Shown here: piece by piece, positions 150 to 48,409 of the stretch
How positions within the stretch are numbered: the first letter of the stretch is position 1
Layout: the number at the start of each line of letters is the position of its first letter
NCBI RefSeq assembly: GCF_001194135.2
Contig: NC_069004.1
Location: forward strand, 13,084,411-13,134,700
Source: Octopus bimaculoides
Taxonomy: Eukaryota
Length of the DNA stretch: 50,290 nt
Direction of reading: 5' to 3'
The notes under the pieces: model-generated
Told to the model about the DNA's origin: nothing
What the model saw: only the letters and a program-made list of their open reading frames with translations
The model's database searches: none
Position numbers and translations under genes: made by a program

Positions 150-560
150 GATGAAGAGTGGAAGGGAGTTGAGCCCATGTGGTGCAAAGGAGCAAAGAGA
201 GAAGATTAATTCCTGTTCATAGTGAAGGTGGGAGTCTGGATGGCACCTGTGCAAAGACAATCCAAACAGACAGGTGTTATAATGAATGAGTGGTAGAGTG
301 GAAATAGCACGAGACTGGGGTATCATTGCTGCGTCTAATGTCTCGGAGGTGCTCCATGAACCGGTCAGCCAAGCAGCATCCTGTTTGACTGATGTACAGA
401 GAAGGACAGAAAGAGCAGGAGATGCAGTAAATGACATTGCTAGAAGTGCATGTAAAGGAGTCAGTGATATGATAGGGATGATGATGGGTGCCTGTGAGGA
501 TGGTGGTGTTGGAGAGGTAGGGGCAAGTGCAGCAGTGTGGGTGGGAGCAGCGGAATGAGC
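150..560 (-). pseudogene. PLE GIY-YIG endonuclease with preceding zinc-knuckle-like linker (decayed)
   Basis: ORF 277..798: RCSHPHCCTCPYL...NVIYCISCSFCPSLYISQT...RFMEHLRD; C-terminal LIFSL..APHGLN in ORF 147..848. Confidence 0.88.
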
Positions 561-884
561 TAGGTTGGGAGGTGGGGTTAGTGAAGAAACTGTGGACCAG
601 GAGGTCATGTAGGTTGTGGAAGATGTGCAAAGTGGAGGGGTCAGACTGGAGTCGCTGGAAGGCTTGGAGAATGGAGTGTTGGAAGGGCAGGGTGGAGGGG
701 GTGGTAGGTGAGTGGAAACGAGAGACGGGTAACGGTGGGGCAGGTGCGGGTGCAGGGAGAGAGAGCAGAGGCACAGTCCACAAAACGTGCTCTGGCAAAG
801 GCGGTGTGGATAGTGGTGAGGGGATATCCAGGAAGGATGAAGTGGCAAGTCACGAGTTGAGACCGAGTCTCAAAGTCATGATTA

Positions 885-1500
885 TCACTGCAGAGCCTGC
901 ACAGACAGAGGAATTGGGAGTAGGGGTGGAGAGCTTGGTGTGGGTAAGGTGGAAGGAGGAGAAGTTAAAGTTGGAGTGTGAGTCTGTGTGTTTGCAGTGG
1001 ATGGAGGTAGTGAGAGTGGAGTTGTGTATGTTGACCGAAATGTCGAGAAAGGCAATGGAAGTGTTGGAAATGGTGCAGGATGGAAGGATTGGGTAAAAGA
1101 GAGGAAGGAGTCTAGTTGTTTGCAGGAGTGTGAAGCTGCACCGATACTGTCATCAATATAACAACCATATAATTTGGGAGTGGGACTAGTAAATCTTGAA
1201 AATATTTGGGCCTCAATGTAGCCAACAAACAGGTTCACATAGTTGAGACCCATTCTCATTCCCATGGCCACTCCCAAGAACTGTTGGTAACCCCCCCACA
1301 CAAACGAGAAGTAGTTGAGGGAGAGAACAAGTTTGGTCAGACGAAGAAGTGTGGATGTGTCAGGTTGGGGGTTGGGTCTAAGAAGTGTTTGAGGGCAAGA
1401 AGTCCTTCGTGGTGTGGGATCACTCTTTATAGACTCTTGATATCAAGAGTGAAGAGAAGTTTAGAGGGGCCAGGAGGGAAGGAGAAAGAGGTGAAAAGGA
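885..1500 (-). pseudogene. PLE reverse transcriptase core (decayed)
   Basis: ORF 885..1301: GVAMGMRMGLNYVNLFVGYIE and YGCYIDD (YxDD); upstream frame LFTLDIKSL*RVIPHHEG. Confidence 0.9.
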
Positions 1501-5144: not shown

Positions 5145-6295
5145 GGCAGCAAGCTGGCAGAATCATTAGCACACTGGATGAAATGCTTAGCGGTGTTTCA
5201 CTTGTCGCTCCAATCTGAGTTCAAATTCTGCTGAGGTCGACTTTGTCTTTCATTCTTTCAGGGGCGATAAAATAAGTACCAGCTGAACACTGTGCCTCCA
5301 ACAAAGGTTGATACAAGAGAAGTACTGGGGTTGACAAAATCAATTCGTCCCTCTCCTCACATTTCTGGCATCAAATTCGCAAATTCAATGACTGGCACCC
5401 GTGCCAGTGGAGCACTAAGAGCACCATCCGAGCATGATTGCTGCCAGAGCAGCTGACTGGCTTCCATGCCGATGGCACGTAAAAAGCACCATTCGAACGT
5501 GTTCGTTACCAGCGTCGCCTTACTGGCACTTGCGCCGGTGGCACATGAAAAAACATTCGAGCGAGGTCGTTGCCAGCGCCGCTGGACTGGCTCCTGTGCG
5601 GGTGGCACGTAAAAAACACCTTTTGAGCATGGCTGTTGCCAGTACTGCCTGAGTGGCCCTCATGTCGGTGGCATGTTGGGTGAAATGCTTAGTTGTATTT
5701 CATCTGCCGCTACATTCAGAGTTCAAATTCCACCATTGTTGACTTTGCCTTTCATCCTTTCAGGGGGGTCGATAAATTAAGTACCAGTTGTGTACTGGGG
5801 TCAATCTAATCAACTGGCACCCTCCCCACAAAAATTTTTGCCTATAGTAGAAAGGATCATCGTCATCATCATCATCATCATGGCAGTGAGCTGGCAGAAT
5901 TTTGTCTGTCTTTATGTCCTGAGTTCAAATTTCATTGAGGTCAACTCTACCTTTCATCCTTTCAGGGTCGATGAAATAAGTACCAGTTGAGCACTGGGGT
6001 CGATGTAATTGACTATCTCCTTCCCACAAAATTTCTGGCCTTGTGCCTTTCATAGAAAGGATTATTATTATTATTAAGGCAAGGAGCTGGCAGAATCGTT
6101 ACTGCATCTCACAAAATACTTAGTAAACTGTCTTCCTTCTTTATATTCTGAGTTCAAATTCCACCAAGGTCGACTTCGCCTTTCATTTTTTTGAGGATCA
6201 TGAAATAAGTACCAGTTGAGCATTGGGGGTCAATGTGATTGACTTGATCCATCCCCTAACAAATTTCAGGCCTTCTGTTTACAATAGAAAGGATT
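5145..6295 (+). mobile_element. Tandem cluster of four SINE family A copies separated by (ATC)n/(ATT)n
   Basis: Repeated gagctggcagaat...gagttcaaatt...ctttcatcctttc...aagtaccagttga. Confidence 0.85.
5390..5672 (+). repeat. GC-rich minisatellite with a ~62-66 bp unit (about 4.5 units) inside the SINE cluster
   Basis: Recurrent ctggc...gtgcc.gtggcacgtaaaaa.cacc.ttcgagc...gttgccag. Confidence 0.8.
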
Positions 6296-9277: not shown

Positions 9278-10022
9278 NNNNNNNNNNNNNNNNNNNNNNN
9301 NNNNNNNNNNNNNNNNNNNNNNNNNNNNNNNNNNNNNNNNNNNNNNNNNNNNNNNNNNNNNNNNNNNNNNNNNNNNNNNNNNNNNNNNNNNNNNNNNNNN
9401 NNNNNNNNNNNNNNNNNNNNNNNNNNNNNNNNNNNNNNNNNNNNNNNNNNNNNNNNNNNNNNNNNNNNNNNNNNNNNNNNNNNNNNNNNNNNNNNNNNNN
9501 NNNNNNNNNNNNNNNNNNNNNNNNNNNNNNNNNNNNNNNNNNNNNNNNNNNNNNNNNNNNNNNNNNNNNNNNNNNNNNNNNNNNNNNNNNNNNNNNNNNN
9601 NNNNNNNNNNNNNNNNNNNNNNNNNNNNNNNNNNNNNNNNNNNNNNNNNNNNNNNNNNNNNNNNNNNNNNNNNNNNNNNNNNNNNNNNNNNNNNNNNNNN
9701 NNNNNNNNNNNNNNNNNNNNNNNNNNNNNNNNNNNNNNNNNNNNNNNNNNNNNNNNNNNNNNNNNNNNNNNNNNNNNNNNNNNNNNNNNNNNNNNNNNNN
9801 NNNNNNNNNNNNNNNNNNNNNNNNNNNNNNNNNNNNNNNNNNNNNNNNNNNNNNNNNNNNNNNNNNNNNNNNNNNNNNNNNNNNNNNNNNNNNNNNNNNN
9901 NNNNNNNNNNNNNNNNNNNNNNNNNNNNNNNNNNNNNNNNNNNNNNNNNNNNNNNNNNNNNNNNNNNNNNNNNNNNNNNNNNNNNNNNNNNNNNNNNNNN
10001 NNNNNNNNNNNNNNNNNNNNNN
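9278..10022. other. Assembly gap
   Basis: N run. Confidence 1.
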
Positions 10023-11759: not shown

Positions 11760-12135
11760 CAGTAATTTCAAGGGATCGGGTAAGTTGATTACATTGACCT
11801 CAGTCATCAACTGGTACTTGACATTATTGACATTGAAAGGGTGAAAGGCAGAGCCAACCTCGGTGGAATTTGAATTCAGAATGTGAAGATGGATGAAATG
11901 CTGTTCAGTATTCTGTACAGTGTGTAAACAATTCTGCCAGCTCGCTGCCTTATTAATAACAATAATGGTCTCACATTGACCCCCAGCACTCAACTGGTAC
12001 TTATTTTATTGACACCAAAATGATGAAAGGTAAAGTCAACCTTGGTGGAATTTGAACTCAGAACATAAAGACAGATCAAATGCCACTAAGCATTTTGCCT
12101 GCTGTGCTAATGATTCTACCAGCTTGTTGCCTTAT
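11760..12135 (-). mobile_element. Two tandem SINE family A copies
   Basis: Reverse complement of the family A consensus, twice. Confidence 0.8.
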
Positions 12136-12700
12136 TTGGAGTTAGCATTATATAATTATCATTGTAATCGATGGAGTGCCAGTTTAAGTGAAATGGTGTT
12201 AATAAAGAAATCCCTTGCTTAGAAAAAAAGCAAGTAAGGGTTGTTGACATGAAGAGCATCCAGCTGTAAAATCCTGCCTGAAATAATTCTCCATCCAAAC
12301 CCATTGTAGCTTGGAAACAAAATAGACATTAAAAAAATGAAAAAAGCTTCAATTATATCATGAATACTATTTTAATAATTAACAAGTTAGTTATTTTATT
12401 AAATCTCCGTTATTAAAAAAAATTAATCAAAACAAATTGGCAATGTATTTCATTAGAAATGTGCTCATGAAAAAGTTAATACATGGATATTAAAAAGTTA
12501 ATTAGAGATACTTTTTACTGCTCATTGCATTAAATATGCTAAAACCAACTTAGCTATTATTTTTCAGGTGGACAGCATCTCTGAGTAATTAACTTTGTGG
12601 ATAAATTCATATTATATGCTAATTTTTCACGACTACTTATGTACATCTATTTAGTGAATCTCTCACCACTACTTTTGAGAGAACTGGAATTGTTATGCTT

Positions 12701-12735
12701 TGCTGAAGAGGTTTAATAAAACTGAAACCTAACCT
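12701..12735 (+). ncRNA. Degenerate hammerhead-like motif
   Basis: CTGAAGA GGTT TAATAA AACT GAAAC CTA; core and stem II present, GUH triplet and stem I not intact. Confidence 0.4.
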
Positions 12736-14115: not shown

Positions 14116-14179
14116 ATTCCTATCTTTAGATAAAAAAAACCAAAAAACAAAAACAAAAACTAGCACTGTCAGTTACAAC

Positions 14180-14470
14180 AGCAAAGATTTCAGTTGACCC
14201 AATCAACGGAACAGCCTGCTTGCGAAATTGATGAGCAAGTGGCTGAGCACTCCACAGACACATGTAACCTTAAGGTAGTTCTCAGGGAGATTCAGCATGA
14301 CACAGGATGTGACAGTGCTGGCCCTTTGAAATACAGGTACTACTTATTTTTGCCAGCTGAGTCGACTGGAGCAATGTGAAATAAAGTGTCTTGCCCAAGG
14401 ACACAGTGTGCTGCTGGGAATCGAACCCATGACCTTGCAAGCCTGAGCTGAATATTCTAACCATGAAGCC
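14180..14470 (-). mobile_element. tRNA-derived SINE family C (conserved central tgtgtccttgggcaagacacttt domain)
   Basis: Minus-strand head tggttagaatattcagctc...gggttcgattccc then tgtgtccttgggcaagacactttatttcacattgctccag. Confidence 0.85.
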
Positions 14471-18350: not shown

Positions 18351-18779
18351 AAAAAAGACTTTTGTCAACAACTACACACCCTCACTGTGAACGTGTTACA
18401 TAACCACCAAGTCCTTTTGAACCCTAACTAGGTTCTGTATTAGTACATAAACATGTAAAAGGCCTATCAGAACAGTTGAAGTTAAGTAACCCAGATGATG
18501 GAACCGTAACAGGAACGTGATTACATAATTACAAGAGTACCACCAATACAGCATGGATCATGACTAAATAAATATACAGAGTCATAAACATATGTATTTA
18601 GCCTCCAGCTTAAACAACAGCCCCGCCTCCGCCCAGATTAAACATGATTGAAAACACATGGTTATGACATGTTCTGCTCATATTTTAGCTAAATGACTGC
18701 TGCCCTTTATATGATAACAGATTCTTTATGATGTCAATATAATTTTATGTGTTATTACAATTTATTATCTTTTCTATAA

Positions 18780-19020
18780 TAGGTACAAGGCCTGAAGTTT
18801 TAGGGGAGGGTGCAAGTTGATTACATCAACCCAATGTTTGTATCATCATCCTCTTGTTCCCCTTACGTTCTGAGTTCAAGTTCTACTGAGGTCATGTTTG
18901 CATTTTATCTACCCAGTGTCAATAAAAGTGCCAGTCAAGTGCTTTTATTGAAGTTGATTAAACTGACTAACCCTGCTTCCCCAATTTTCAGACTTTGTGT
19001 CTATGCCAGAAGCAATTATT
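18780..19020. mobile_element. Rearranged SINE family A fragments
   Basis: tacaaggcctgaagttttagggg (minus tail) joined to ctgagttcaagttctactgaggtc (plus body). Confidence 0.55.
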
Positions 19021-19029
19021 ATTATTCCA

Positions 19030-19269
19030 AAGAATGAAAAGTTTTGAATGGTACAACAATGCACTATAATACAAAAATGGACTATATACCTGTTGTAATT
19101 TAGTTATCCATAGTCCAATGATATTTCGGAATACAATTCCTTCTTCAGATCTTCTGAAGGAATTGTATTCCGAAATATCATCGGACTATAGATAACCAAA
19201 TTACAACAGGTATATAGTCCATTTTTGTATTATAGTGCATTGTTGTACCATTCAAAACTTTTCATTCTT
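19030..19269. mobile_element. 240-bp near-perfect palindrome of two head-to-head hammerhead-bearing arms (PLE pseudo-LTR-like)
   Basis: Arms 19030-19140 and 19159-19269 are reverse complements with 3 transition mismatches. Confidence 0.85.
19115..19151 (-). ncRNA. Minimal type I hammerhead ribozyme motif (AUC triplet, self-complementary stem III)
   Basis: GAT CTGAAGA A GGAAT-TGT-ATTCC GAAA TATC ATT; core intact, stem I only 3 bp. Confidence 0.7.
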
Positions 19270-19339
19270 AACAAACAATACACAATGCTTCAAGAGAACT
19301 ACAATACTCTCCTATTATTATTCTTTCTCTGGCAATGAT

Positions 19340-19660
19340 ACTCTGTCAGTTATGATGACAAAGGTTCCAGTTGATCTGATCAATGGAACAGCTTGCTCGT
19401 GAAATTAACGTGCAAGTGGCTGGGCATCCCCAGACATGTGTACCCTTAAAATAGTTCTGCGAGAGATTCAGTGTAATACAGAATGACAAGGCTGGCCCAT
19501 TGAAAGGCAGGTACTACTTCACATTTTTGTCAGCTGAGTGGACTGGAGCAATGTGAAAATAAAAGTGTCTTGCTCAAGGATATAATGTGCTGCTGGGAAT
19601 TGAACTCATGACCATATATTTATGAGCTGAATACCCTAACCACTAAGCCACGTGCCTTCA
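19340..19660 (-). mobile_element. SINE family C
   Basis: Homologous to 14180-14470. Confidence 0.85.
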
Positions 19661-20235: not shown

Positions 20236-21029
20236 CTCAGAGTTGATAAAGCAAGTACCAGTTGAGTACTGGGTCCAAGTAATCAACTAGCCCCCTTCCC
20301 CCAAATTTCAGGCCTTGTGCCAATTGTAGAAAGCGTTTCTATCTCTACCTTTATGTTCCATGTTCAAGTCCTGCTGAGGTCAGCTTTACTTTTCATCCTT
20401 TTGGGGGTCAATAAAATAAGTACCAGTAGAGCACTGGGGTCCATGTCAATCGACGTAATCCCTCCATCTAAGATTGACGGCCTTGTGTCGAAATCTGAAA
20501 CCATTATTATTATTATTATTATGCTGTCTGAGAAGCAGAAATGATACCAAACTAATAGTGTGGTATCTAATGAAGTATCTTGAAGTGATATTCAGCTATA
20601 AGTAGGGTTAAAATCTCCTGAGAGGGGGAAAAATATGTTAAAGGACTGCTCATAGGACTTGAACAAAGCATCTTCTATAACCCAGACAGATGTGTTAACA
20701 ATTACACTTAAGTAGCAGCTCGCCAGTCTGTCTTCAAGGGTGTATATGTTTTGTAAGTAAGAATTATTGAGTGAAAATAATAGCAATATATTGAAAATAA
20801 TTGCTCAAATCAGTATGATGGCTTAATTTCCAGCAAGAGAAGGCAAATGTCATTATTTGCACTCTTATGATAGGCAACAGATGGTAATGGTACAATTGGT
20901 GCAGCACTAGAAGAATAAAGGTCCTGGCAATGTTTATGTCCTATTTTCATTCTGTATTCAAATCTCACAGAAATTATTAATTTTACATTTGAATCCTCTG
21001 AGTGTTAATAAGATACTGTCTCTTTGTCA

Positions 21030-21345
21030 GTTACAACGACAAGGGTTCCAGTTGATCTGATCAATGGAACAACCTACTTGTGATATTAACATGCAAGGGG
21101 ATGAGCACTCCACAGACATGTGTACCCTTAACGTAGGTCTCAGGGAGATGCAGTATGACACAGAATGTGACAAGGCTGGCCCTTTGAAATACAGGTACAA
21201 CTCATTTTTAGCCAATTGATTGAAGTCAAGCAATGTGATATAAAGTGTCTTGCCGAAGTACACAATGCGTCGCTGGGAATTGAACTCATGACTGTATGAA
21301 TATGAGCTGAGTACCCTAAGCACTAAGCCACGTGTCTTCATGTTG
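21030..21345 (-). mobile_element. SINE family C
   Basis: Homologous to 14180-14470. Confidence 0.85.
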
Positions 21346-21859
21346 ATAAGATAAAGTATCAATCAAATACTGAGAATGGAAAGGATAAGGGGGTAGGTGA
21401 CAATAAATTGACTACACTCTCTCCCCCTGTCCCACCTCCAAATTAGTGTCCTTGTACTAATATAAAAATCATCTCTACAATTGAGTTGTTCTATACATTC
21501 TGCATAGCCTTTTATGTTACAAATGAATTAATCATTAACACATAATCATATAGTGTAAATAATTTTGTATAACACAACACAGGGAAAATATTAAAAAGAA
21601 AAGGAGCTAATTATGAATTCTAACACAGGCTGATGGAAACCTGCAACTGAAAACCATGCAATCCAGTCCTACTAGTTCATGGTTGAGGGGTTAGCATCTA
21701 AACTGGTTCCCTACTGGACCTATCCAGTGAGGAGGGTGTGTCAGTAACCAGAAAGTTAAAAAAGCAAAACTTGTCAATGGTGGAGGGGGTTCCTTGAGAG
21801 CCAACAACATCCATATATCTTGGGGAAGAGATTTTACTATTTTTACTGGCACTCTGTCA

Positions 21860-22148
21860 TTTATAATGATGAGGGTTCCACTTGATCTAATCAATGGAAC
21901 AGCTTGCTTGTGAAATTAACATGCAAGTGACTGAGCACTCTACAGACAATCATACCTTTAATATAGTTCTCAAGGAGATACAGCGTGACACAGAATGTCA
22001 TAAAGCTGACCTTTGAATTACAGACACAATTTTGCCAGCTAGAGCAACATGAAATAAATGTCTTGCTCAAGGACACAACTTGCCACCAGGAATTGAACCC
22101 ACAACAGTAAGAATAATTTCCTAACCACTAAGCCATGCACCTTCACCG
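21860..22148 (-). mobile_element. SINE family C (internally deleted)
   Basis: Homologous to 14180-14470. Confidence 0.8.
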
Positions 22149-22318: not shown

Positions 22319-22656
22319 NNNNNNNNNNNNNNNNNNNNNNNNNNNNNNNNNNNNNNNNNNNNNNNNNNNNNNNNNNNNNNNNNNNNNNNNNNNNNNNNNN
22401 NNNNNNNNNNNNNNNNNNNNNNNNNNNNNNNNNNNNNNNNNNNNNNNNNNNNNNNNNNNNNNNNNNNNNNNNNNNNNNNNNNNNNNNNNNNNNNNNNNNN
22501 NNNNNNNNNNNNNNNNNNNNNNNNNNNNNNNNNNNNNNNNNNNNNNNNNNNNNNNNNNNNNNNNNNNNNNNNNNNNNNNNNNNNNNNNNNNNNNNNNNNN
22601 NNNNNNNNNNNNNNNNNNNNNNNNNNNNNNNNNNNNNNNNNNNNNNNNNNNNNNNN
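22319..22656. other. Assembly gap inside (TA)n
   Basis: N run. Confidence 1.
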
Positions 22657-25034: not shown

Positions 25035-25385
25035 TGGGAGGGTGCATGGCCTAGTGGTTAGAGTGTTGGGATTGGAATCATGAGGTTGTAAGTTTGATTG
25101 CCAGACTGGGCCCTGTCTTTTGTTCTTGAGCAAGACACTTTATTTCATGTTGCTCCAGTTCTCTCAGCTGTAGAAGGAGTTGTGACCATTATTGGTGCCA
25201 AGCTGTATCAGTCTTTGTCTTTCCCTTGGAAAATATTGGTGGCATGGAGAGAGGAGACTGGTATGCAAGGGCAACTGCTGGTTTTCCACAAACAACCTTG
25301 CTCAGACTTGTGCCTCAGAGGGGAACTTTTTAGGTGCAATCCCATGGTGATTTGTGACCGAAGGAGGTCTTTACCCCTTCACCCT
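25035..25385 (+). mobile_element. SINE family C variant with a different 3' half (as at 33525-33870)
   Basis: gggtgcatggcctagtggttagagtg...cttgagcaagacactttatttcatgttgctccag...ttccacaaacaacc...ggtctttacc. Confidence 0.8.
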
Positions 25386-25392
25386 TATATAA

Positions 25393-25627
25393 AACTATTT
25401 AGTAAAATTGACAAAAAGAGTACAGCAAACTTGCTCTGGGGAGTGGAAAATCCAGTGTTTCAGACAGAGTCCTTCATCAGGGAAAGCTGGTGCAGAGGAT
25501 GTAAAACTCTGCTGTCTCATAAATTTCCTCCTGTCAACTTCTTGAATACGGACTGTATGAAATGTTGGATTTTCCAGTCCTCACAACAAGTTCATTGTAT
25601 TCTTTTTATTAGTTTTACTAAATAATA
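25393..25627. mobile_element. Old head-to-head inverted repeat with hammerhead remnants at the inner end of each arm
   Basis: 25461-25396 (minus) versus 25559-25624 (plus): 52/66 identical without gaps. Confidence 0.75.
25450..25484 (-). ncRNA. Degenerate type I hammerhead motif
   Basis: TCC CTGATGA A GGAC-TCT-GTCT GAAAC ACT GGA. Confidence 0.6.
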
Positions 25628-25987
25628 TTAGTCTGCAAATGCTGGCCTACACCAGTCTCTTTGGAGCCTGTTTGATTTGTATAAATAACAATGGATGTTA
25701 ATTACATGGGAAGATCACAGATGGCATGTTCCATATTTTCATTAGTTGTTTTAGATGCCTATGCACTCACAAGCTCATACACACATGGGCTCAGGAATAG
25801 GGGGTACAGGAGATGCAAGTGCACCTTCTAAAATATTTTGTAGGGGTGATGAATGGAACAATGGTAGTGAGAGGTGAAGAAACATATGGGGAATAGGGGT
25901 TCCAGGTCATTAGACCCTTGTTTTCTCTCTTGAAATAATTATAATCCACAGATTGTTTTAAAACAAAGATAGGGCTGTCTCCCTTTA

Positions 25988-26799: not shown

Positions 26800-27330
26800 C
26801 CACATCCACTGAAGTATGTTTTTTTAGTGATACTAATCTGTTAAAGACATGAAATGCTACTAAGCATTTTGGCCAGTGTACTAACGGTTCTTCTAGCTTA
26901 CAGTTTAAAGAAGGAATAGTAATAATAATAATCCTTCCTACTATAGGCACAAGGCCTGAAATTTTAGGGGAAGGAGATAAGTTGTTTACATTGACCCCAG
27001 TATTCAACAGGTACTTATTTTATTGACCCTGAAAGGATGAAAGGCAAAGTTGACCTTCGTGGAATTTGAACTCAGAACATAGCGGCAGACAAAATACTAA
27101 GCATTTTGCCCGTCGTGCTAACAATTCTGCCAGCTCACTGCCTTAATGATGATGATGATGATGATGATGATGACGATGATGATAATAATCCTTTCTACAG
27201 TAGGCACAAGGCCTGAAATTTTGGGGGAGGGAGTGAGTTGATCACATCGACCCCAGTACTTGACTGGTACTTAATTTATCGACCCTGAAAGGATGAAAGG
27301 CCAAATTGACCTGGATGGAATTTGAACCCA
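26800..27330 (-). mobile_element. Cluster of three SINE family A copies with (AAT)n/(GAT)n spacers
   Basis: Reverse complement of the family A consensus, repeated. Confidence 0.8.
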
Positions 27331-28504
27331 GAATTTTATGTCACTGGTATGGGTGTCTTTTATGTGTCACTGGCACAGGTGCCTTTTACATGTCACCAGA
27401 AGTGGCCATGACCATGATTTCACTTAGCTTGACATGTCTTCTCAAGCGGAGCAAATCACCAAAAGTCTTGGTCACTTGTCATTGCCTTTGTGAGACTCAA
27501 CAGCAGAAGATCCATTTCACCACTTTGTCCCATGACATCCTGGGTCTACCTCTTCCGCAGGTTCCCTCCACAGTTAGAGATGGGCACTTCTTTACGCAGC
27601 AGTCCTCATCCATACACATCACACGATAATACCAGTGCAGTCTTCTCTCTTGCACAAAGCATTGCATTTGACAGAGTAATATGAATGCTAAAGAGTTAAA
27701 CAACAATGTCTGCCCCGCTTTCTAATCTTCCTATTCTCCTTTCATGTTAAACACTTATGTTATTCCAACGTTACACATTCTGGTTAAAAGACAGTGTCAT
27801 ATGTACTTGGTGGATGGTGCCTGCAGTAAAATTTAACCATAGAAGACTGTGTGGTTTGATTATGTGTCTGTGATTATTGGATCTTGAAGAATAGAATATA
27901 AAAATAAGACACACAAATAGATGCAGCATTGAAGATCTATTCTTTCAGGGCCTAGAACAGCAAGGTGAGCCAAACAGGGATCTGCTATGTGGTCCCTTAA
28001 CCTGCTGATGCAATAGCCAAATTTTTCTCAAATTGCATCCTATTGTTTTATACAAAGAAGGATACATTTAAGATGTAAAAAAACAAAATTTGACTTAGCC
28101 ACAACTGAAATGGTTTTGCGCATATGTTTATTCAATCAGGGCTTGCCTGGAGCTAAACCTCACCCTCCACAATAACAATGCTACTACTGCTACTATGAAT
28201 AACAAACAATGATGGTACACCCCACCAGACACACACACACGCACACTATACATAGCACCAAACCCATGCTTGCATAGAAAAACAGATATATGATGATGAC
28301 GACGATGGTGATGACATACTAGGATATATGCACAAACATTCATACATAAGTACATTAGCACAGCTGGAGCTTCTAACATCTTTAGCAGCAATAGGTTAAG
28401 TAGTGTGCATGTATGCAATAGGATAAATAGTGTATGCATGCACACATGTGCATGCATGCAATTTAAGATTTTGGATTCTTCAAAAATAGCCAGAACCTTA
28501 TGAT

Positions 28505-28800
28505 ATCTACAGTTTTATATTTAAGAGATGAGGAATTATGTACATTATTTACAATTGACAGATATTTGTCCTCATCTTGTTTGTTGTTAACACGTTTCGG
28601 CTATTATACCCTCCAGCCTTCATCAGGTGTCTTGGGGGAAATTTCGAACCTGGGTTCTCATTCCTAAGGTATTTTTCAATGTTGTTGTTGTTATTATTAT
28701 TATTATTATTATTATTCAGGTCACTGCCTGGAATCGAACTTGGAATCTTGGGGTTACTAGCCAGCGCTCTTAACCACTATGCCATATGCCCGTGGGCAAT
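28505..28800 (-). mobile_element. tRNA-headed element carrying an internal hammerhead ribozyme motif
   Basis: A box TGGCATAGTGG (28774-28784), B box GTTCGATTCC (28730-28739), (AAT/AAC)n, then HHR at 28589-28631. Confidence 0.8.
28589..28631 (-). ncRNA. Hammerhead motif lacking the cleavage triplet (likely inactive copy)
   Basis: GACAC CTGATGA A GGCT-12nt-AGCC GAAAC GTGTT; stems I and II pair but no GUH lies between GAAAC and stem I. Confidence 0.7.
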
Positions 28801-31167: not shown

Positions 31168-32090
31168 NNNNNNNNNNNNNNNNNNNNNNNNNNNNNNNNN
31201 NNNNNNNNNNNNNNNNNNNNNNNNNNNNNNNNNNNNNNNNNNNNNNNNNNNNNNNNNNNNNNNNNNNNNNNNNNNNNNNNNNNNNNNNNNNNNNNNNNNN
31301 NNNNNNNNNNNNNNNNNNNNNNNNNNNNNNNNNNNNNNNNNNNNNNNNNNNNNNNNNNNNNNNNNNNNNNNNNNNNNNNNNNNNNNNNNNNNNNNNNNNN
31401 NNNNNNNNNNNNNNNNNNNNNNNNNNNNNNNNNNNNNNNNNNNNNNNNNNNNNNNNNNNNNNNNNNNNNNNNNNNNNNNNNNNNNNNNNNNNNNNNNNNN
31501 NNNNNNNNNNNNNNNNNNNNNNNNNNNNNNNNNNNNNNNNNNNNNNNNNNNNNNNNNNNNNNNNNNNNNNNNNNNNNNNNNNNNNNNNNNNNNNNNNNNN
31601 NNNNNNNNNNNNNNNNNNNNNNNNNNNNNNNNNNNNNNNNNNNNNNNNNNNNNNNNNNNNNNNNNNNNNNNNNNNNNNNNNNNNNNNNNNNNNNNNNNNN
31701 NNNNNNNNNNNNNNNNNNNNNNNNNNNNNNNNNNNNNNNNNNNNNNNNNNNNNNNNNNNNNNNNNNNNNNNNNNNNNNNNNNNNNNNNNNNNNNNNNNNN
31801 NNNNNNNNNNNNNNNNNNNNNNNNNNNNNNNNNNNNNNNNNNNNNNNNNNNNNNNNNNNNNNNNNNNNNNNNNNNNNNNNNNNNNNNNNNNNNNNNNNNN
31901 NNNNNNNNNNNNNNNNNNNNNNNNNNNNNNNNNNNNNNNNNNNNNNNNNNNNNNNNNNNNNNNNNNNNNNNNNNNNNNNNNNNNNNNNNNNNNNNNNNNN
32001 NNNNNNNNNNNNNNNNNNNNNNNNNNNNNNNNNNNNNNNNNNNNNNNNNNNNNNNNNNNNNNNNNNNNNNNNNNNNNNNNNNNNNNNNNN
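31168..32090. other. Assembly gap
   Basis: N run. Confidence 1.
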
Positions 32091-33524: not shown

Positions 33525-33870
33525 AGGCACATGGCTCAGTGGTTAGAGTGTCAGGTTTACAATCATGAGGTTTTGGGTTCAATTTCTGGACTGGGTTGTG
33601 TGTTGTGTTCTTGAGCAAGACACTTTATTTTACATGGTTGTTCCAGTTTATTCAGCTGTAGAAATGAGCTGTGATGTCACTGGTGCTAAACTGTATTGGC
33701 CTTTGCCTTTCTCTTGGACAACATTGGTAGTGTGGAGAGGGGAAACTAGTATGCATGGGTGATTGCTGGTCTTCCACAAACAACCCTGCCTAGACTTGAG
33801 CCTCAGAGGGGAACTTTCTAGGTTCAATTCCATGATCATTTATGACCAAAGGGGGTCTTTACTCTTTTAC
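33525..33870 (+). mobile_element. SINE family C variant
   Basis: Homologous to 25035-25385. Confidence 0.85.
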
Positions 33871-34069
33871 CCTTTATGTATGTATGTATGTACGTACATA
33901 CACATGTGTGTGTGTGTGTGTGTGTGTGTGTTTGGGTGTTTGTGTACAGGGTGTCCATGAACTTTAAAAATTCGGGAAAAAAAACCCCAGGTAACTCAGC
34001 AGTTGCATGTAACCAATGGAGCACATGTGGAAGTGTTCTCATGTTTCTAAGAAAACTTGGTTTATTTTT

Positions 34070-34795: not shown

Positions 34796-35415
34796 NNNNN
34801 NNNNNNNNNNNNNNNNNNNNNNNNNNNNNNNNNNNNNNNNNNNNNNNNNNNNNNNNNNNNNNNNNNNNNNNNNNNNNNNNNNNNNNNNNNNNNNNNNNNN
34901 NNNNNNNNNNNNNNNNNNNNNNNNNNNNNNNNNNNNNNNNNNNNNNNNNNNNNNNNNNNNNNNNNNNNNNNNNNNNNNNNNNNNNNNNNNNNNNNNNNNN
35001 NNNNNNNNNNNNNNNNNNNNNNNNNNNNNNNNNNNNNNNNNNNNNNNNNNNNNNNNNNNNNNNNNNNNNNNNNNNNNNNNNNNNNNNNNNNNNNNNNNNN
35101 NNNNNNNNNNNNNNNNNNNNNNNNNNNNNNNNNNNNNNNNNNNNNNNNNNNNNNNNNNNNNNNNNNNNNNNNNNNNNNNNNNNNNNNNNNNNNNNNNNNN
35201 NNNNNNNNNNNNNNNNNNNNNNNNNNNNNNNNNNNNNNNNNNNNNNNNNNNNNNNNNNNNNNNNNNNNNNNNNNNNNNNNNNNNNNNNNNNNNNNNNNNN
35301 NNNNNNNNNNNNNNNNNNNNNNNNNNNNNNNNNNNNNNNNNNNNNNNNNNNNNNNNNNNNNNNNNNNNNNNNNNNNNNNNNNNNNNNNNNNNNNNNNNNN
35401 NNNNNNNNNNNNNNN
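34796..35415. other. Assembly gap
   Basis: N run. Confidence 1.
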
Positions 35416-40021: not shown

Positions 40022-40486
40022 NNNNNNNNNNNNNNNNNNNNNNNNNNNNNNNNNNNNNNNNNNNNNNNNNNNNNNNNNNNNNNNNNNNNNNNNNNNNNNN
40101 NNNNNNNNNNNNNNNNNNNNNNNNNNNNNNNNNNNNNNNNNNNNNNNNNNNNNNNNNNNNNNNNNNNNNNNNNNNNNNNNNNNNNNNNNNNNNNNNNNNN
40201 NNNNNNNNNNNNNNNNNNNNNNNNNNNNNNNNNNNNNNNNNNNNNNNNNNNNNNNNNNNNNNNNNNNNNNNNNNNNNNNNNNNNNNNNNNNNNNNNNNNN
40301 NNNNNNNNNNNNNNNNNNNNNNNNNNNNNNNNNNNNNNNNNNNNNNNNNNNNNNNNNNNNNNNNNNNNNNNNNNNNNNNNNNNNNNNNNNNNNNNNNNNN
40401 NNNNNNNNNNNNNNNNNNNNNNNNNNNNNNNNNNNNNNNNNNNNNNNNNNNNNNNNNNNNNNNNNNNNNNNNNNNNNNNNNNNNNN
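40022..40486. other. Assembly gap
   Basis: N run. Confidence 1.
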
Positions 40487-43330: not shown

Positions 43331-43550
43331 ACCACAGCTACATTTATGCTTTCCTAACTACAGATATACTTATCGCCGTCACCACCACCGCCGCCAACGC
43401 TGCCACCACCACTGCCGCCGCCGCCGCCGCCGCCAACACCGCCACCACCANNNNNNNNNNACCACAGCTACATTTATGCTTTCCTAACTACAGATATACT
43501 TATCGCCGTCACCACCACCGCCGCCAACGCTGCCACCACCACTGCCGCCG
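43331..43550 (+). repeat. Identical ~90-bp segment on both sides of a 10-N gap (likely contig overlap artefact)
   Basis: accacagctacatttatgc...gccgcc at 43331 and 43461; N at 43451-43460. Confidence 0.85.
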
Positions 43551-45950: not shown

Positions 45951-46359
45951 GGAAGGTTTTAAATGGTAAATGGCTATGAGGGTCCATCCAAGAAAAATGG
46001 AAATCAAAGGGGTCCATAGTGGGTCAAAGGGGTCTATAGTGGGTCAAAGGCGTCAAGAACCACTGATCATCACAAACACCATCAGCATCCCTCTAAATAT
46101 CATCATCATTACCATCATCACTATTAGCACCACTGTAGCAAACATCATCACCATCAGCATGATAACTACAAGAAAAAAAACCAAAACAACAAAGAGCAAA
46201 AAAAAAAATACAAACAACCTTCACCACCACCTAAGAAAGAGTCTGAAGCTGTTCAGGAATGTCTGTCTGTGTATCTGGGATTGGTCACATGACAGTGCTA
46301 GGTAACTGTGAAGCAGACATATGGTAATTGAATAACAGTTATGTCTAAAGTAACTGATG

Positions 46360-46985
46360 GAGGTGGTGGAGGTGGTGGTGATGGTGGTGGTGATAAGGGT
46401 GGCTTCAATGATGGAGGGAGGAGATGGTGATGAAATGAAATGAAATAGAAGAGGTGAGGGTAGTCGCAGTGGTAGTGAAAGTGATGGTCATGGTGGCGGT
46501 GGTGACAGTAAGAGTGGGTGTAGCAACAAGAGTGACAGTGGTGGTGGTGGTGGTGGTGGTGGTGGTGGTGGTAGCAGTGGCAAGCAACAAGAGTGGTGGT
46601 AGGAGTGACAGTGAATAGTGGTGATGGTGAGAGTGGCGGTGGTGGAGGTGGCAGTGAGGATGGTGATGGTGGGGGTGGTGAGAATGGTTGGTGGTGGCGG
46701 TGGTGAGAGTGGTGGTAGTGAGGACTGCAATGGTGGCAGCAAGGACTGTAAGAGGTGGTAGCAGTAGTAATAGTAGTAGTGAAGGTGGTGGTGGTGGTGG
46801 TGGGCCATTGTAGTGGTAGAGAGGATGGTGAGAACAATGATGATGATGGTGATGATGATGAGGAGGAGGACAAGGTGAAGAGAACAATGGTGATGATGAT
46901 GATGATGAAGACAAGACTAATGCTGTGATGTTGATGCTAATGGATGATAGACAGTGGTAGTGGTAACAGCAATACCAGTGGTGAA
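46360..46985. repeat. GGT/GAT/GTA trinucleotide low-complexity region
   Basis: Direct inspection; source of the His/Pro/Thr-rich ORFs. Confidence 0.85.
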
Positions 46986-47402
46986 AGACAAGCTTTACAT
47001 GACTAGTCATAATAGGAGAATTTGTTGTTCATTTTATTCTATTTTTTAAAAAAATTTTATTGAAGAGTATTTCTAGTAGTTTCTTTCCTTCACCCTTCCT
47101 CTCTAAATTGAGTTAAAAAGTACCAAACCTGATGACATGGAATCATTTGAATGTTATCTCCAAAGCTGGTCAAAAAAAAAAAATACTAAAAACAAAATAA
47201 TACATAAAAGTTGTCTTTGATAGAATGGCAATCTAACTGAAAGAAATACAGCTTGATATGTGTGAATGTGTGTGTATACATGTGTATGTAACAAAAATAA
47301 TAAAATAAAATAAAACAAGAAGAAAGAAGAAAATGAGGGGAAAGTTTTTAAAGAACACATTCCAATCTCTCTCCTGCTGTCATAACTATTCCAATTTTTG
47401 AA

Positions 47403-47486: not shown

Positions 47487-47599
47487 ATAAGATCTGTGAG
47501 ATCTTAATTCTGTGTTAAATTATTAAAGGGTATCCTACAGACTGGTATAAAAGCTACTAGCCAAATCGTTAACTCATTTTTATGTAACTCTTATGTCTC

Positions 47600-48160
47600 C
47601 CTGCCTCTCTACTTCTCTGCCCATCTCACCTCATCCTTGTATATCTGTCTCTCTATCTCACACTCAATCCTTGAGTCTCAGTCTCTGCATTTCTCACTCA
47701 ATCCTTGTGGTGTCAGTCAATTCATTAGTCTGTCCATCTCATAATCAATCAATCTTTCTATCTCACAATGTATCCATGATCCGTCTTTCTTTCAATCCTT
47801 CTGTTTGTCAACGTTCATCTCACATTCGATCCTTCTGTAACATGCTGCCCATCTCTTACTCAGTCCAGTCCTTCAATCTGTCAATGTATCCGTCCATTTA
47901 TCAGTCAATCTTCACCAGTCTCTGTCCATCTCTCATTCAATCCTTCTGTCTGTCAATGCATCCCTTCATCTATCAGTCAATCTGTGTCTGTCCTGTCCTG
48001 TCCATCACTCACTCAATCCTTCTGTCTGTCAATGTATCCAACCATCTATCAGCTAATTTTCACCTGTCTCTGTCCATCTCTCATTTAATCCTTCTGTCTG
48101 TCAATATCCATCTCACATTCAATCCTATAACACACTGTCCATCTCTCACTCAGCCTTCCT
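47600..48160 (+). repeat. Degenerate pyrimidine-rich minisatellite (~70-75 bp period with ~35 bp subunits)
   Basis: Recurrent ctgtccatctctca(c/t)tcaatccttctgtctgtcaatg. Confidence 0.8.
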
Positions 48161-48409
48161 GTGAGATACCTTGGCTACCTCACAGCTAATCCTTATGTGT
48201 CAGTCAAAATATTTCATTCAACTGAGAATCAAGACTCAGGGAGGTGGAGGAGTAAAAGCATACAAACAAATAAATGATAAATAAAGAACATACAGAAAGC
48301 ATAAACTCAAACTTACATCTATCAAGAACCCTAAGATTCATAAAACCCATAAGACCAGAGCTTAACCAAGTTTCCATGGTGTATAAGTGATTAACATTAC
48401 AACCCCCAC

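What the first reader, a model, noticed from the sequence alone, without database searches (positions are those of the whole stretch)
19030..19269. Young 240-bp palindrome centred on two back-to-back hammerhead cores
The 111-bp arms differ at only 3 positions (19102/19197, 19109/19190, 19117/19182). The minus arm has an intact core, CTGAAGA A GGAAT-TGT-ATTCC GAAA TATC (AUC site, AUAU stem III). The plus arm lost 3 nt of core but keeps the better stem I arm (ATCGG). All three mismatches would be G-U wobbles in a minus-strand RNA and A-C mismatches in a plus-strand RNA. Inference: read-through transcription would give a ~115-bp hairpin that masks the ribozyme and could be an ADAR or Dicer substrate, which matters if the host is a heavily RNA-editing cephalopod.
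Basis: partly seen in the sequence, partly recalled or inferred. Interest (0 to 1): 0.72.

Follow-up and report, generated by a model that had tools for sequence, protein, structure and literature searches.

The report
Head-to-head Penelope-type retroelement stub
The 240-bp palindrome is real and most likely marks one insertion of a Penelope-like retroelement that left two tiny mirror-image end-fragments, each with a minimal hammerhead ribozyme motif; this is a known kind of transposon scar, not a new RNA gene.

Summary
The palindrome exists as described: arms 19030-19143 and 19156-19269, 114 nt each, 3 transition mismatches, and a 12-nt asymmetric centre around AGATCT.

- **Ribozyme motifs.** The minus arm carries the only sequence in the window that meets the published descriptor of Penelope-like-element (PLE) minimal hammerheads, against 0.0017 expected per window. 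The plus-arm core is broken. No Rfam hammerhead model recognises either arm.
- **Insertion anatomy.** The two copies lie head-to-head with their 3' ends outward. Both end exactly 111 nt after the start of helix II. Only the right copy continues into a 43-nt, 74% A+C extension, ending at +154. An 11-bp direct repeat (TATTATTATTC) brackets the whole 286-bp block, inside the (ATT)4 tail of a tRNA-derived SINE.
- **Match to the literature.** This fits published PLE insertion signatures and the biochemistry of the anole PLE, PAc: both target strands cut and extended, an ATT target, reverse transcription starting at +111-118, and an optional tail between two start sites.
- **Verdict.** It is a young, non-coding, PLE-derived double insertion. 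As it stands the ribozyme should be inactive.
- **Limits.** No sister copies could be retrieved, so family membership rests on anatomy alone. The ADAR/Dicer idea is untested.

The parts
18863..19026 (+). Context: 3' part of a tRNA-derived SINE (B-box-like GAGTTCAAGTTC) ending in an (ATT)4 tail, which is the insertion target
   Evidence: Aligns with other copies in the window. Copy 5912-6075 ends in (ATT)5.
19017..19027 (.). Left copy of the candidate target-site duplication TATTATTATTC
   Evidence: It is the longest direct repeat between the two flanks. A repeat of >=10 nt in the same geometry occurs at 0.6% of all window positions and at 4.3% of positions that follow (ATT)3.
19028..19029 (.). 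Two filler nucleotides (CA) between the TSD and the left arm
   Evidence: Read directly from the sequence. They are not part of the palindrome and do not match the element's +112/+113.
19030..19143 (-). Left arm: element copy whose sense strand is the minus strand, running from the hammerhead (inner end) to +111 (outer end)
19120..19148 (-). Minimal hammerhead motif: CUGAAGA (19148-19142), unpaired A (19141), helix II GGAAU/AUUCC with loop UGU (19140-19128), GAAA (19127-19124), palindromic UA (19123-19122), U16.1 (19121), C17 (19120). The predicted cut lies between 19120 and 19119.
   Evidence: Coordinates. It is the only strict-descriptor hit in the window, with 0.0017 expected. The features follow PMC4209133.
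19144..19155 (.). Asymmetric 12-nt centre TTCAGATCTTCT, with the 6-bp palindrome AGATCT at 19147-19152. This is the junction of the two 5'-truncated copies.
19154..19181 (+). Defective hammerhead core of the right arm (CUGAAG|GAAUUGUAUUCC GAAA UAUC), lacking A9 and the extra nucleotide
   Evidence: It is not found by the descriptor scans.
19156..19269 (+). Right arm: element copy in plus sense, ending at +111
19270..19312 (+). One-sided 43-nt 'tail' continuing the right copy to +154. It is 74% A+C.
   Evidence: Only 4.9% of 43-nt windows are as strand-skewed in A+C. It corresponds to the optional PLE tail described in PMC8557442 and PMC11167929.
19313..19323 (.). Right copy of the candidate target-site duplication TATTATTATTC

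Best explanation
The block 19028-19312 is a single retro-insertion made by the machinery of a hammerhead-bearing Penelope-like element (PLE). It landed in the (ATT)4 tail of an older SINE.

Inferred mechanism: the PLE endonuclease nicked both strands of the ATT run 11 bp apart, which gives the TSD TATTATTATTC. Each free 3'-OH then primed reverse transcription of an element RNA. The top strand started at the inner RT start site (+111, counted from the start of hammerhead helix II). The bottom strand started at the outer RT start site (+154), which is why a 43-nt AC-rich tail is present on one side only. The two antisense cDNAs grew towards each other and both stopped within about 3 nt of the same template position, just 5' of the hammerhead core. 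They were joined at a 6-bp palindrome (AGATCT). The result is a 240-bp palindrome with element 3' ends outward and hammerhead cores back to back.

Shown: the palindrome, the min-HHR motif, the equal +111 ends, the one-sided AC-rich extension, the flanking 11-bp repeat, and the ATT/SINE-tail target.

Inferred: that two cDNAs were made in one event, that the template RNA had a defined 5' end at the ribozyme's edge, and that the parent is a PLE or a pLTR-derived non-autonomous relative (a retrozyme-like monomer).

The locus has no ORF and is a dead-on-arrival fragment. The minus-arm hammerhead should not cleave here. It has no helix III partner (min-HHRs work as dimers), helix I is only 3 bp, and in any read-through RNA it is locked inside a 114-bp duplex. 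The plus-arm core lacks A9.
For: 1. Palindrome and mismatches.
2. [quoted passage not shown] It is the only such site in the window. The expectation is 0.0017 per window, and 0 of 3000 shuffles also had helix I >=3 bp.
3. Orientation and geometry: both copies read outward from the centre, both end at +111, and the right one continues to +154. In PAc, stem II starts at +1, RT starts at +111-118 in an AC-rich stem-loop, the optional 30-40-bp tail is the stretch between two RT start sites, the endonuclease prefers 5'-ATT-3' in AT-rich DNA, and both target strands are cut and extended (PMC11167929).
4. PMC8557442 describes heavy 5' truncation, an adjacent inverted 5'-truncated copy, a tail at only one end, HHRs near the 3' ends, variable-length TSDs and a microsatellite bias.
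5. The 11-bp direct repeat brackets palindrome plus tail. The tail is 74% A+C.
6. The target is the (ATT)n tail of a SINE.
7. The genome does carry C-terminal-EN PLEs: a decayed copy lies at 280-1442. Cephalopods are reported to have Penelope elements and 235 Rfam hammerhead_1 loci (PMC6962438).
8. PMC4209133 also reports dual min-HHRs on opposite strands 100-700 bp apart.
Against: - No sister copy or parent element was found, so homology of the arm to any PLE pLTR is untested.
- The TSD lies in microsatellite sequence and is only modestly improbable (4.3% given an adjacent (ATT)3).
- The tail is 43 nt, slightly over the quoted 30-40 bp.
- The +111 agreement is with a lizard element of unknown relatedness and may be coincidence.
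- Rfam hammerhead models do not score the motif.
- Helix II is 5 bp, against 6-8 bp in the described min-HHRs.
- The model does not by itself explain why both cDNAs end at the same template position, or why the central 12 nt are asymmetric.
Confidence: 0.6

Rival explanations
1. A single solo copy (right arm plus tail) was inserted first. A later DNA-level fold-back or template-switch event at the short inverted repeat CTTCAGA-TCT-TCTGAAG then duplicated it in inverted orientation.
For: A perfect 7-bp inverted repeat with a 3-nt spacer sits at the centre, and both arms are the same length. Fold-back inverted duplications typically leave a short asymmetric spacer (background knowledge).
Against: The inverted copy would have had to stop exactly at the element's +111 end, 2 nt from the left TSD copy. 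A repair event has no reason to respect that boundary. The flanking 11-bp repeat argues that the whole block arrived in one step.
Confidence: 0.12
2. The source element was already a palindromic (hairpin) non-autonomous element. The whole unit of about 286 nt was copied from one RNA in a single ordinary TPRT event.
For: There is one TSD around the whole block. The three arm differences cluster within 16 nt (p about 0.045), which could reflect inherited rather than post-insertion differences.
Against: There is no second palindromic copy in the window or in any collection searched. An RNA of -196 kcal/mol is a poor RT template. The left end falling exactly at +111, a position matching a known internal RT start, is more naturally explained by independent priming.
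Confidence: 0.12
3. It is a foldback-type or MITE-type DNA transposon with long terminal inverted repeats, and the hammerhead-like motif is coincidental.
For: The structure consists almost entirely of two 114-bp inverted repeats. A second inverted repeat of 241 bp lies at 25390-25630.
Against: No direct repeat sits immediately next to the arms; the flanks are ...TTCCA and AACAA.... There are no other copies in 50 kb. The strict min-HHR match has only 0.0017 expected per window. Nothing in this model predicts the HHR-to-end distance, the AC-rich one-sided extension or the ATT target. Similarity to the 25-kb inverted repeat is not significant.
Confidence: 0.08
4. It is an assembly or library artefact, such as a chimeric inverted read or a de Bruijn hairpin.
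For: The window is a gapped scaffold with six N runs. PLE inverted structures are known to trouble short-read assemblies (PMC8557442).
Against: The arms differ at 3 positions, including a CpG transition, and the centre is asymmetric, whereas artefactual fold-backs give identical arms. The two flanks are different unique or SINE sequences. The palindrome lies in a gap-free stretch of about 12 kb, with the nearest N runs at 10022 and 22319.
Confidence: 0.04
5. It is an exapted hairpin-RNA locus (endo-siRNA, miRNA-like or ADAR substrate) maintained for its double-stranded RNA.
For: The predicted hairpins are very stable. All three mismatches are G-U compatible on the minus strand. Generic long-hairpin miRNA models give sub-threshold Rfam hits.
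Against: Every Rfam hit is far below its gathering score, and the hits are to unrelated plant miRNA families that match any long hairpin. The G-U pattern has p=0.25. There is no conservation or expression evidence. A young TE scar explains everything seen.
Confidence: 0.04

Closest known systems
Complex insertions of canonical EN+ Penelope-like elements (an inverted 5'-truncated copy next to another copy, with a one-sided 30-40-bp tail), as described by Craig et al. 2021 (PMC8557442) and earlier Arkhipova/Evgen'ev work
   Same: Head-to-head inverted copies with 3' ends outward, extreme 5' truncation, an extension at one end only, a variable-length TSD, a microsatellite target, and a hammerhead near the 3' end.
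   Different: Both copies here are reduced to about 120 nt and truncated at the same point. No ORF or pLTR is attached, and no sequence homology to a named PLE could be shown.
PAc (Poseidon of Anolis carolinensis) in vitro integration, PMC11167929
   Same: An ATT-containing AT-rich target, both strands used as primers, and two RT start sites. The inner site lies about 111 nt after the start of HHR stem II, and the sites are separated by a tail-length AC-rich segment.
   Different: The host phylum differs and no sequence similarity was tested. The cut site is at +21 here versus +26 in PAc, the tail is 43 nt versus 30-40 bp, and in PAc this region is the 5' end of the ORF whereas here it is non-coding.
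Minimal hammerheads (min-HHR) of metazoan PLEs, Cervera & de la Pena 2014 (PMC4209133)
   Same: [quoted passage not shown] Pairs on opposite strands have been reported.
   Different: Helix II is 5 bp rather than 6-8. Helix I is only 3 bp and is cut off by the palindrome centre. The two cores are 5 nt apart rather than 100-700 bp. Family covariation was not tested.
Animal non-LTR retrozymes and their dispersed monomers (bioRxiv 10.64898/2026.07.22.740005)
   Same: Short non-coding HHR-bearing units derived from PLE pLTR termini. Monomers are scattered in intergenic DNA, and the unit size falls within the reported 51-972 bp.
   Different: There is no tandem direct repeat here. The arrangement is inverted, so circular-RNA biogenesis by two same-sense ribozymes is impossible.
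L1 twin-priming inversions (background knowledge)
   Same: An inverted segment is created during target-primed reverse transcription, and the insertion is flanked by a TSD.
   Different: Twin priming joins adjacent, non-overlapping parts of one RNA. Here both arms copy the same region, and each begins at a specific internal start site.

Membership tests
Hammerhead ribozyme (canonical; Rfam Hammerhead_1/3/II/HH9/HH10) | Conserved core CUGANGA ... GAAA with a cleavable N-U-H site | tested here: met
   The minus arm reads CUGAAGA...GAAA-UA-U-C. The plus arm fails this test because it lacks A9.
Hammerhead ribozyme (canonical; Rfam Hammerhead_1/3/II/HH9/HH10) | Three helices (I, II, III) closing the core within one molecule | tested here: not met
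   Helix II is 5 bp, helix I is only 3 bp (GAU/AUU), and helix III cannot form in cis. The HHR-constrained fold is -15.3 kcal/mol, against an MFE of -21.0.
Hammerhead ribozyme (canonical; Rfam Hammerhead_1/3/II/HH9/HH10) | Covariance-model score at or above the gathering threshold | tested here: not met
   There is no hammerhead hit at gathering score over the whole window, nor at E<=10 in 18900-19400.
Hammerhead ribozyme (canonical; Rfam Hammerhead_1/3/II/HH9/HH10) | Self-cleavage at position 17 | not testable with these tools
   This needs an in vitro transcription and cleavage assay with monomer and dimer constructs.
PLE minimal hammerhead (min-HHR, PMC4209133) | [quoted passage not shown] | tested here: met
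   A at 19141; the feature is listed.
PLE minimal hammerhead (min-HHR, PMC4209133) | G10.1-C11.1 pair closing helix II | tested here: met
   GGAAU/AUUCC.
PLE minimal hammerhead (min-HHR, PMC4209133) | Palindromic 15.2-16.2 with little or no loop 3 (works as a dimer) | tested here: met
   GAAA-UA-UC, so A15.1-U-A-U16.1 is self-complementary.
PLE minimal hammerhead (min-HHR, PMC4209133) | Long helix II (6-8 bp) and helix I of 4-5 bp (2 bp in D. virilis) | tested here: inconclusive
   Helix II is 5 bp and helix I is 3 bp. This lies between the described variants.
PLE minimal hammerhead (min-HHR, PMC4209133) | Belongs to a genome-wide consensus family showing covariation, with some members inside PLE pLTRs | not testable with these tools
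   The host genome is not available. No relatives were found in the window, the protein collections or the metagenome scans.
Penelope-like element insertion (canonical EN+ PLE) | ORF with a telomerase-like RT and a GIY-YIG endonuclease | tested here: not met
   There is no long ORF at 19017-19323, and the open frame is not unusual. The locus can only be a fragment or non-autonomous derivative. A separate decayed PLE ORF lies at 280-1442.
Penelope-like element insertion (canonical EN+ PLE) | 5'-truncated copies in inverted (head-to-head) arrangement | tested here: met
   described.
Penelope-like element insertion (canonical EN+ PLE) | Optional tail of about 30-40 bp at one end only, bounded by two RT start sites | tested here: met
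   A 43-nt AC-rich extension is present on the right only, so the copy ends are at +111 and +154. Described. It is slightly longer than the quoted range.
Penelope-like element insertion (canonical EN+ PLE) | Variable-length TSD, and an AT-rich, ATT or microsatellite target | tested here: met
   The 11-bp repeat TATTATTATTC lies in an (ATT)4 SINE tail. Described. The chance level is about 4% given the microsatellite.
Penelope-like element insertion (canonical EN+ PLE) | Sequence homology of the fragment to a PLE pLTR or 3' end | not testable with these tools
   No cephalopod genome or Repbase library was accessible. The PLE remnant in the window shares no similarity with the arm.
Non-LTR retrozyme | Tandem direct repeats, each with a type I hammerhead | tested here: not met
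   Only two copies are present, and they are in inverted orientation. At best the locus is a monomer-type derivative.
MITE / foldback DNA transposon | Terminal inverted repeats flanked immediately by a short fixed-length TSD, in multiple copies | tested here: not met
   Inverted repeats are present, but no direct repeat abuts them. The sequence is single-copy in the window.
miRNA / hairpin-RNA gene | Match to a curated family at gathering score; evidence of processing | tested here: not met
   Only sub-threshold hits to unrelated long-hairpin miRNA models were found, for example MIR860 at 61 bits against a gathering score of 89. Expression is not testable here.

The most novel reading that the evidence does not exclude
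The locus is an in vivo snapshot of concerted, symmetric target-primed reverse transcription by a dimeric PLE ribonucleoprotein. In one event both target strands were used, and each of the two alternative RT start sites was used once. Both cDNAs ran off the template at the same point, immediately 5' of the hammerhead core. That would imply that the mobilised RNA has a defined 5' end at the ribozyme's upstream edge, made by something other than cleavage at C17, such as an internal promoter or another processing step. A by-product would be that such mini double insertions seed long perfect hairpins that could feed RNAi or ADAR pathways against the family.
Probability: 0.2. Interest if true: 0.55.

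Novelty: new member of a known kind. Interest (0 to 1): 0.3.

Why it matters
In itself this is a dead transposon scar in repeat-rich, probably octopod, DNA. Its value is as a clean natural example.

- The distances between the hammerhead, the two copy ends and the tail reproduce what was measured in vitro for a lizard PLE. The two-armed structure is also what cutting and extension of both strands predicts.
- If a genome-wide survey found many such symmetric mini-insertions, they would give in vivo evidence on a PLE integration mechanism that is still poorly understood.
- Such a survey could also show where the mobilised RNA begins.

For annotation, the lesson is practical. Near-perfect short palindromes with back-to-back hammerhead cores should be read as PLE insertion products before they are called ribozyme or hairpin-RNA genes.

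Tried and rejected
1. Rfam. No hammerhead hit at gathering score or at E<=10. The only hits were generic long-hairpin miRNA/sRNA models below threshold, which I rejected as family assignments.
2. A loose core scan gave 4 sites against 0.12 expected. The other three (+12703, -25480, -28626) fail the strict descriptor and are single-copy or unrelated, so I claim no genome-wide enrichment.
3. Pfam did not recognise the decayed PLE ORFs. Homology search did.
4. Contigs of the closest PLE proteins (L001-L003, ENA) share no repeats with the window and come from other animals.
5. A 54-codon open frame across arm plus tail suggested coding, as in PAc. There was no homologue in the word-indexed search. 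The full HMMER search gave only two tandem-repeat ORFs with summed weak matches, which I judged spurious. The open frame is matched by 18% of random genomic segments. I dropped the idea.
6. Exact look-ups of five window ORFs around the palindrome found nothing on record, so no independent assembly of the locus was obtained.
7. Two metagenome scans with arm 23-mers and 32-mers returned nothing.
8. No SINE paralogue spans the insertion point, so there is no empty-site control.
9. Similarity between the 19-kb arms and the second inverted pair at 25.4-25.6 kb is not significant against genomic controls. No TSD or tail could be defined there.
10. The apparent extension of the palindrome into the left flank is explained by that flank being the SINE's own 3' end.
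11. The supplements of PMC4209133 and the paper PMC522041 are not held.

Full report
**Observation**

The palindrome is in the sequence as described.
- The repeat finder reports arms 19030-19143 and 19156-19269, 114 nt each, 97% complementary and 12 nt apart.
- A global alignment shows exactly three differences, at 19102/19197, 19109/19190 and 19117/19182. All are transitions, and the last is CpG versus CpA.
- The central 12 nt (TTCAGATCTTCT) are asymmetric around a perfect AGATCT at 19147-19152.
- Read outward from the centre, the minus arm gives CUGAAGA-A-GGAAU-UGU-AUUCC-GAAA-UA-U-C, with C17 at 19120. The plus arm gives CUGAAG-GAAUUG... and so lacks A9 and the following nucleotide.
- The three mismatches are G-U compatible in minus-strand RNA and A-C in plus-strand RNA. 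The predicted hairpins are -196 and -174.5 kcal/mol, z about -26. With three transitions this strand pattern has probability 1/4 and says nothing on its own.
- The arm has no other copy in the window by blastn or nhmmer.
- The palindrome lies in a gap-free stretch of about 12 kb between N runs ending at 10022 and starting at 22319.
- Unequal arms, an asymmetric centre and two different flanks argue against an assembly fold-back.

**Is it a hammerhead?**

No Rfam hammerhead model matches, either at gathering score over the whole window or at E<=10 locally. The local hits are long-hairpin miRNA/sRNA models far below their thresholds.

That is expected for the minimal hammerheads that Cervera and de la Pena found in Penelope-like elements (PLEs). 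Those escaped canonical descriptors. [quoted passage not shown]

A descriptor built from those features matches exactly one place in the window, the minus arm. The expectation is 0.0017 hits per window, and none of 3000 shuffles also had a helix I of 3 bp.

- Helix I here is only GAU/AUU (GAU/AUC in the plus-arm version, which keeps the CpG).
- Helix II is 5 bp.
- As a lone sense RNA, the arm prefers an internal hairpin. The hammerhead-constrained fold is about 6 kcal/mol worse than the MFE.

So the motif is a good min-HHR by sequence. In this context it is predicted to be inert: there is no same-sense partner for helix III, helix I is very short, and any read-through transcript sequesters it in a 114-bp duplex.

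- The upstream sequence 18863-19026 is a tRNA-derived SINE in plus orientation. Copies of its family end in (ATT)n.
- The longest direct repeat between the two flanks is TATTATTATTC, at 19017-19027 and 19313-19323. It brackets 2 filler nt (CA), the palindrome, and a further 43 nt on the right only (19270-19312).
- A repeat of >=10 nt in that geometry occurs at 0.6% of window positions and at 4.3% of positions that follow (ATT)3.
- The 43-nt extension is 74% A+C. Only 4.9% of 43-nt windows are as skewed.
- Numbering from the first base of helix II, both arms end at +111 and the extension ends at +154.

**Comparison with what is known of PLEs**

Craig et al. describe PLE insertions as follows (PMC8557442):
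- They are heavily 5'-truncated.
- They are often accompanied by an inverted 5'-truncated copy immediately adjacent.
- They carry a 30-40-bp tail at only one end.
- Their hammerheads lie near the 3' ends.
- They have variable-length TSDs and a bias for microsatellites.

The in vitro study of the anole element PAc reports the following (PMC11167929):
- The protein cuts and extends both target strands, unlike LINEs.
- It prefers 5'-ATT-3' in AT-rich DNA.
- Reverse transcription starts internally, in an AC-rich stem-loop 111-118 nt after the point where HHR stem II and the ORF begin.
- It uses two start sites, and the interval between them is the tail.
- The protein is predicted to dimerise.

The present locus reproduces each of these points: an ATT-run target, two copies with 3' ends outward as expected if each nicked strand primed a cDNA, one copy ending at +111, and the other ending 43 nt further in an AC-rich segment. 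Dual min-HHRs on opposite strands were also noted in 2014.

The genome carries PLEs. A frameshifted RT, CX4CXXC linker, CCHH and GIY-YIG remnant lies at about 280-1442 on the minus strand. Its homologues carry RVT_1 and GIY-YIG domains, and its closest named relative is an Octopus bimaculoides fragment at 78% identity. Cephalopod genomes are reported to contain Penelope elements and Rfam hammerhead_1 loci (PMC6962438).

**Mechanism proposed**

I propose one insertion event in which both strands of the (ATT)4 run were nicked 11 bp apart and each primed reverse transcription of an element RNA. One cDNA started at the inner start site and one at the outer. The two antisense cDNAs met and were joined at AGATCT.

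What remains inferred:
- Two cDNAs, rather than a later duplication, produced the arms.
- Both cDNAs stop within about 3 nt of the same template position because the RNA began there. That position is not the hammerhead cut site, which lies 30 nt downstream, so C17 cleavage did not define the end.
- The asymmetric centre reflects non-templated nucleotides or a later centre rearrangement of the palindrome.

The three arm differences cluster at +24, +32 and +39 (p about 0.045). They may be post-insertion mutations, or they may be differences between two template RNAs. 'Young' is therefore likely, given 2.6% divergence against 17-35% among neighbouring SINE copies, but it is not strictly dated.

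**Rivals**

- A DNA-level fold-back duplication of a solo copy would not be expected to end exactly at +111 next to the TSD.
- A pre-existing palindromic master element remains possible but has no second copy.
- A MITE or foldback transposon lacks adjacent TSDs and does not predict the ribozyme, the distances, the tail or the target.
- An assembly artefact is unlikely for the reasons given under Observation.
- An exapted hairpin-RNA gene has no positive evidence.

**Limits**

I could not obtain any relative of the arm.
- Protein-based routes returned nothing usable.
- Two metagenome scans returned nothing.
- The window holds no other copy.

Assignment to a PLE family therefore rests on anatomy and published signatures, not on homology. 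The individual statistical supports are modest (TSD about 4%, tail composition about 5%); only the ribozyme motif is strong (about 0.2% per window).

**Verdict**

It is a new member of a known kind, of modest interest, and it is mainly useful as an in vivo match to the recently described two-strand, two-start-site integration mechanism.

Noticed in passing
window 280-1442 (minus strand): A decayed canonical Penelope-like element. RT motifs (...YIDD...) lie at about 1442-888. A CX4CXXC linker plus the CCHH/GIY-YIG endonuclease lie at about 849-280, split over two frames. Pfam finds nothing, but homologues carry RVT_1 and GIY-YIG, and the best named hit is an Octopus bimaculoides fragment at 78% identity. 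It shares no similarity with the palindrome arms.
   Followed up: partly
window 25390-25630: A second, older inverted pair: arms 25390-25499 and 25526-25630, about 78% identical, with a 26-nt centre and 241 bp overall. The minus arm holds a hammerhead-core-like CTGATGA-A-GGAC-TCT-GTCT-GAAA that fails the strict min-HHR test. It directly abuts the 3' end of a SINE copy (25200-25386, similar to 33688-33874). Similarity to the 19-kb arms is not significant, and no TSD could be defined.
   Followed up: partly
window 28590-28626 (minus) and 12703-12727 (plus): Two further CUGANGA...GAAA core-like sites. The one at 28626 has the extra A and a G-C-closed helix II but a G at position 17. It lies just downstream of a tRNA-like SINE head (28740-28800) and an (AAT)n run. 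Both sites are single-copy in the window.
   Followed up: partly
window-wide, e.g. 5912-6075, 11791-12136, 14166-14421, 18764-19026, 19340-19600, 21022-21280, 21851-22073, 27018-27333: Dense tRNA-derived SINE families with B-box-like GAGTTCAAATTC and (ATT)n tails, at 65-83% identity between copies. They include a 182-bp tandem dimer at 11791-12136.
   Followed up: partly
window 19052-19086 and 19213-19247: Each arm contains an imperfect 18-nt tandem repeat (TACAACAATGCACTATAA / TACAAAAATGGACTATAT). In sense RNA it forms a hairpin of about 20 bp at roughly +47 to +92, upstream of the +111 end. It could be a protein-binding or RT-positioning structure.
   Followed up: no
window 9278-10022, 22319-22656, 31168-32090, 34796-35415, 40022-40486, 43451-43460: Six runs of N (10-923 nt), mostly flanked by microsatellites. 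The window comes from a gapped scaffold assembly.
   Followed up: no
window 46300-47010 and 47590-48190: Long ORFs made of low-complexity His-, Pro-, Thr- and Ser-rich translations of triplet and 21-72-nt tandem repeats. They are probably not genes.
   Followed up: no
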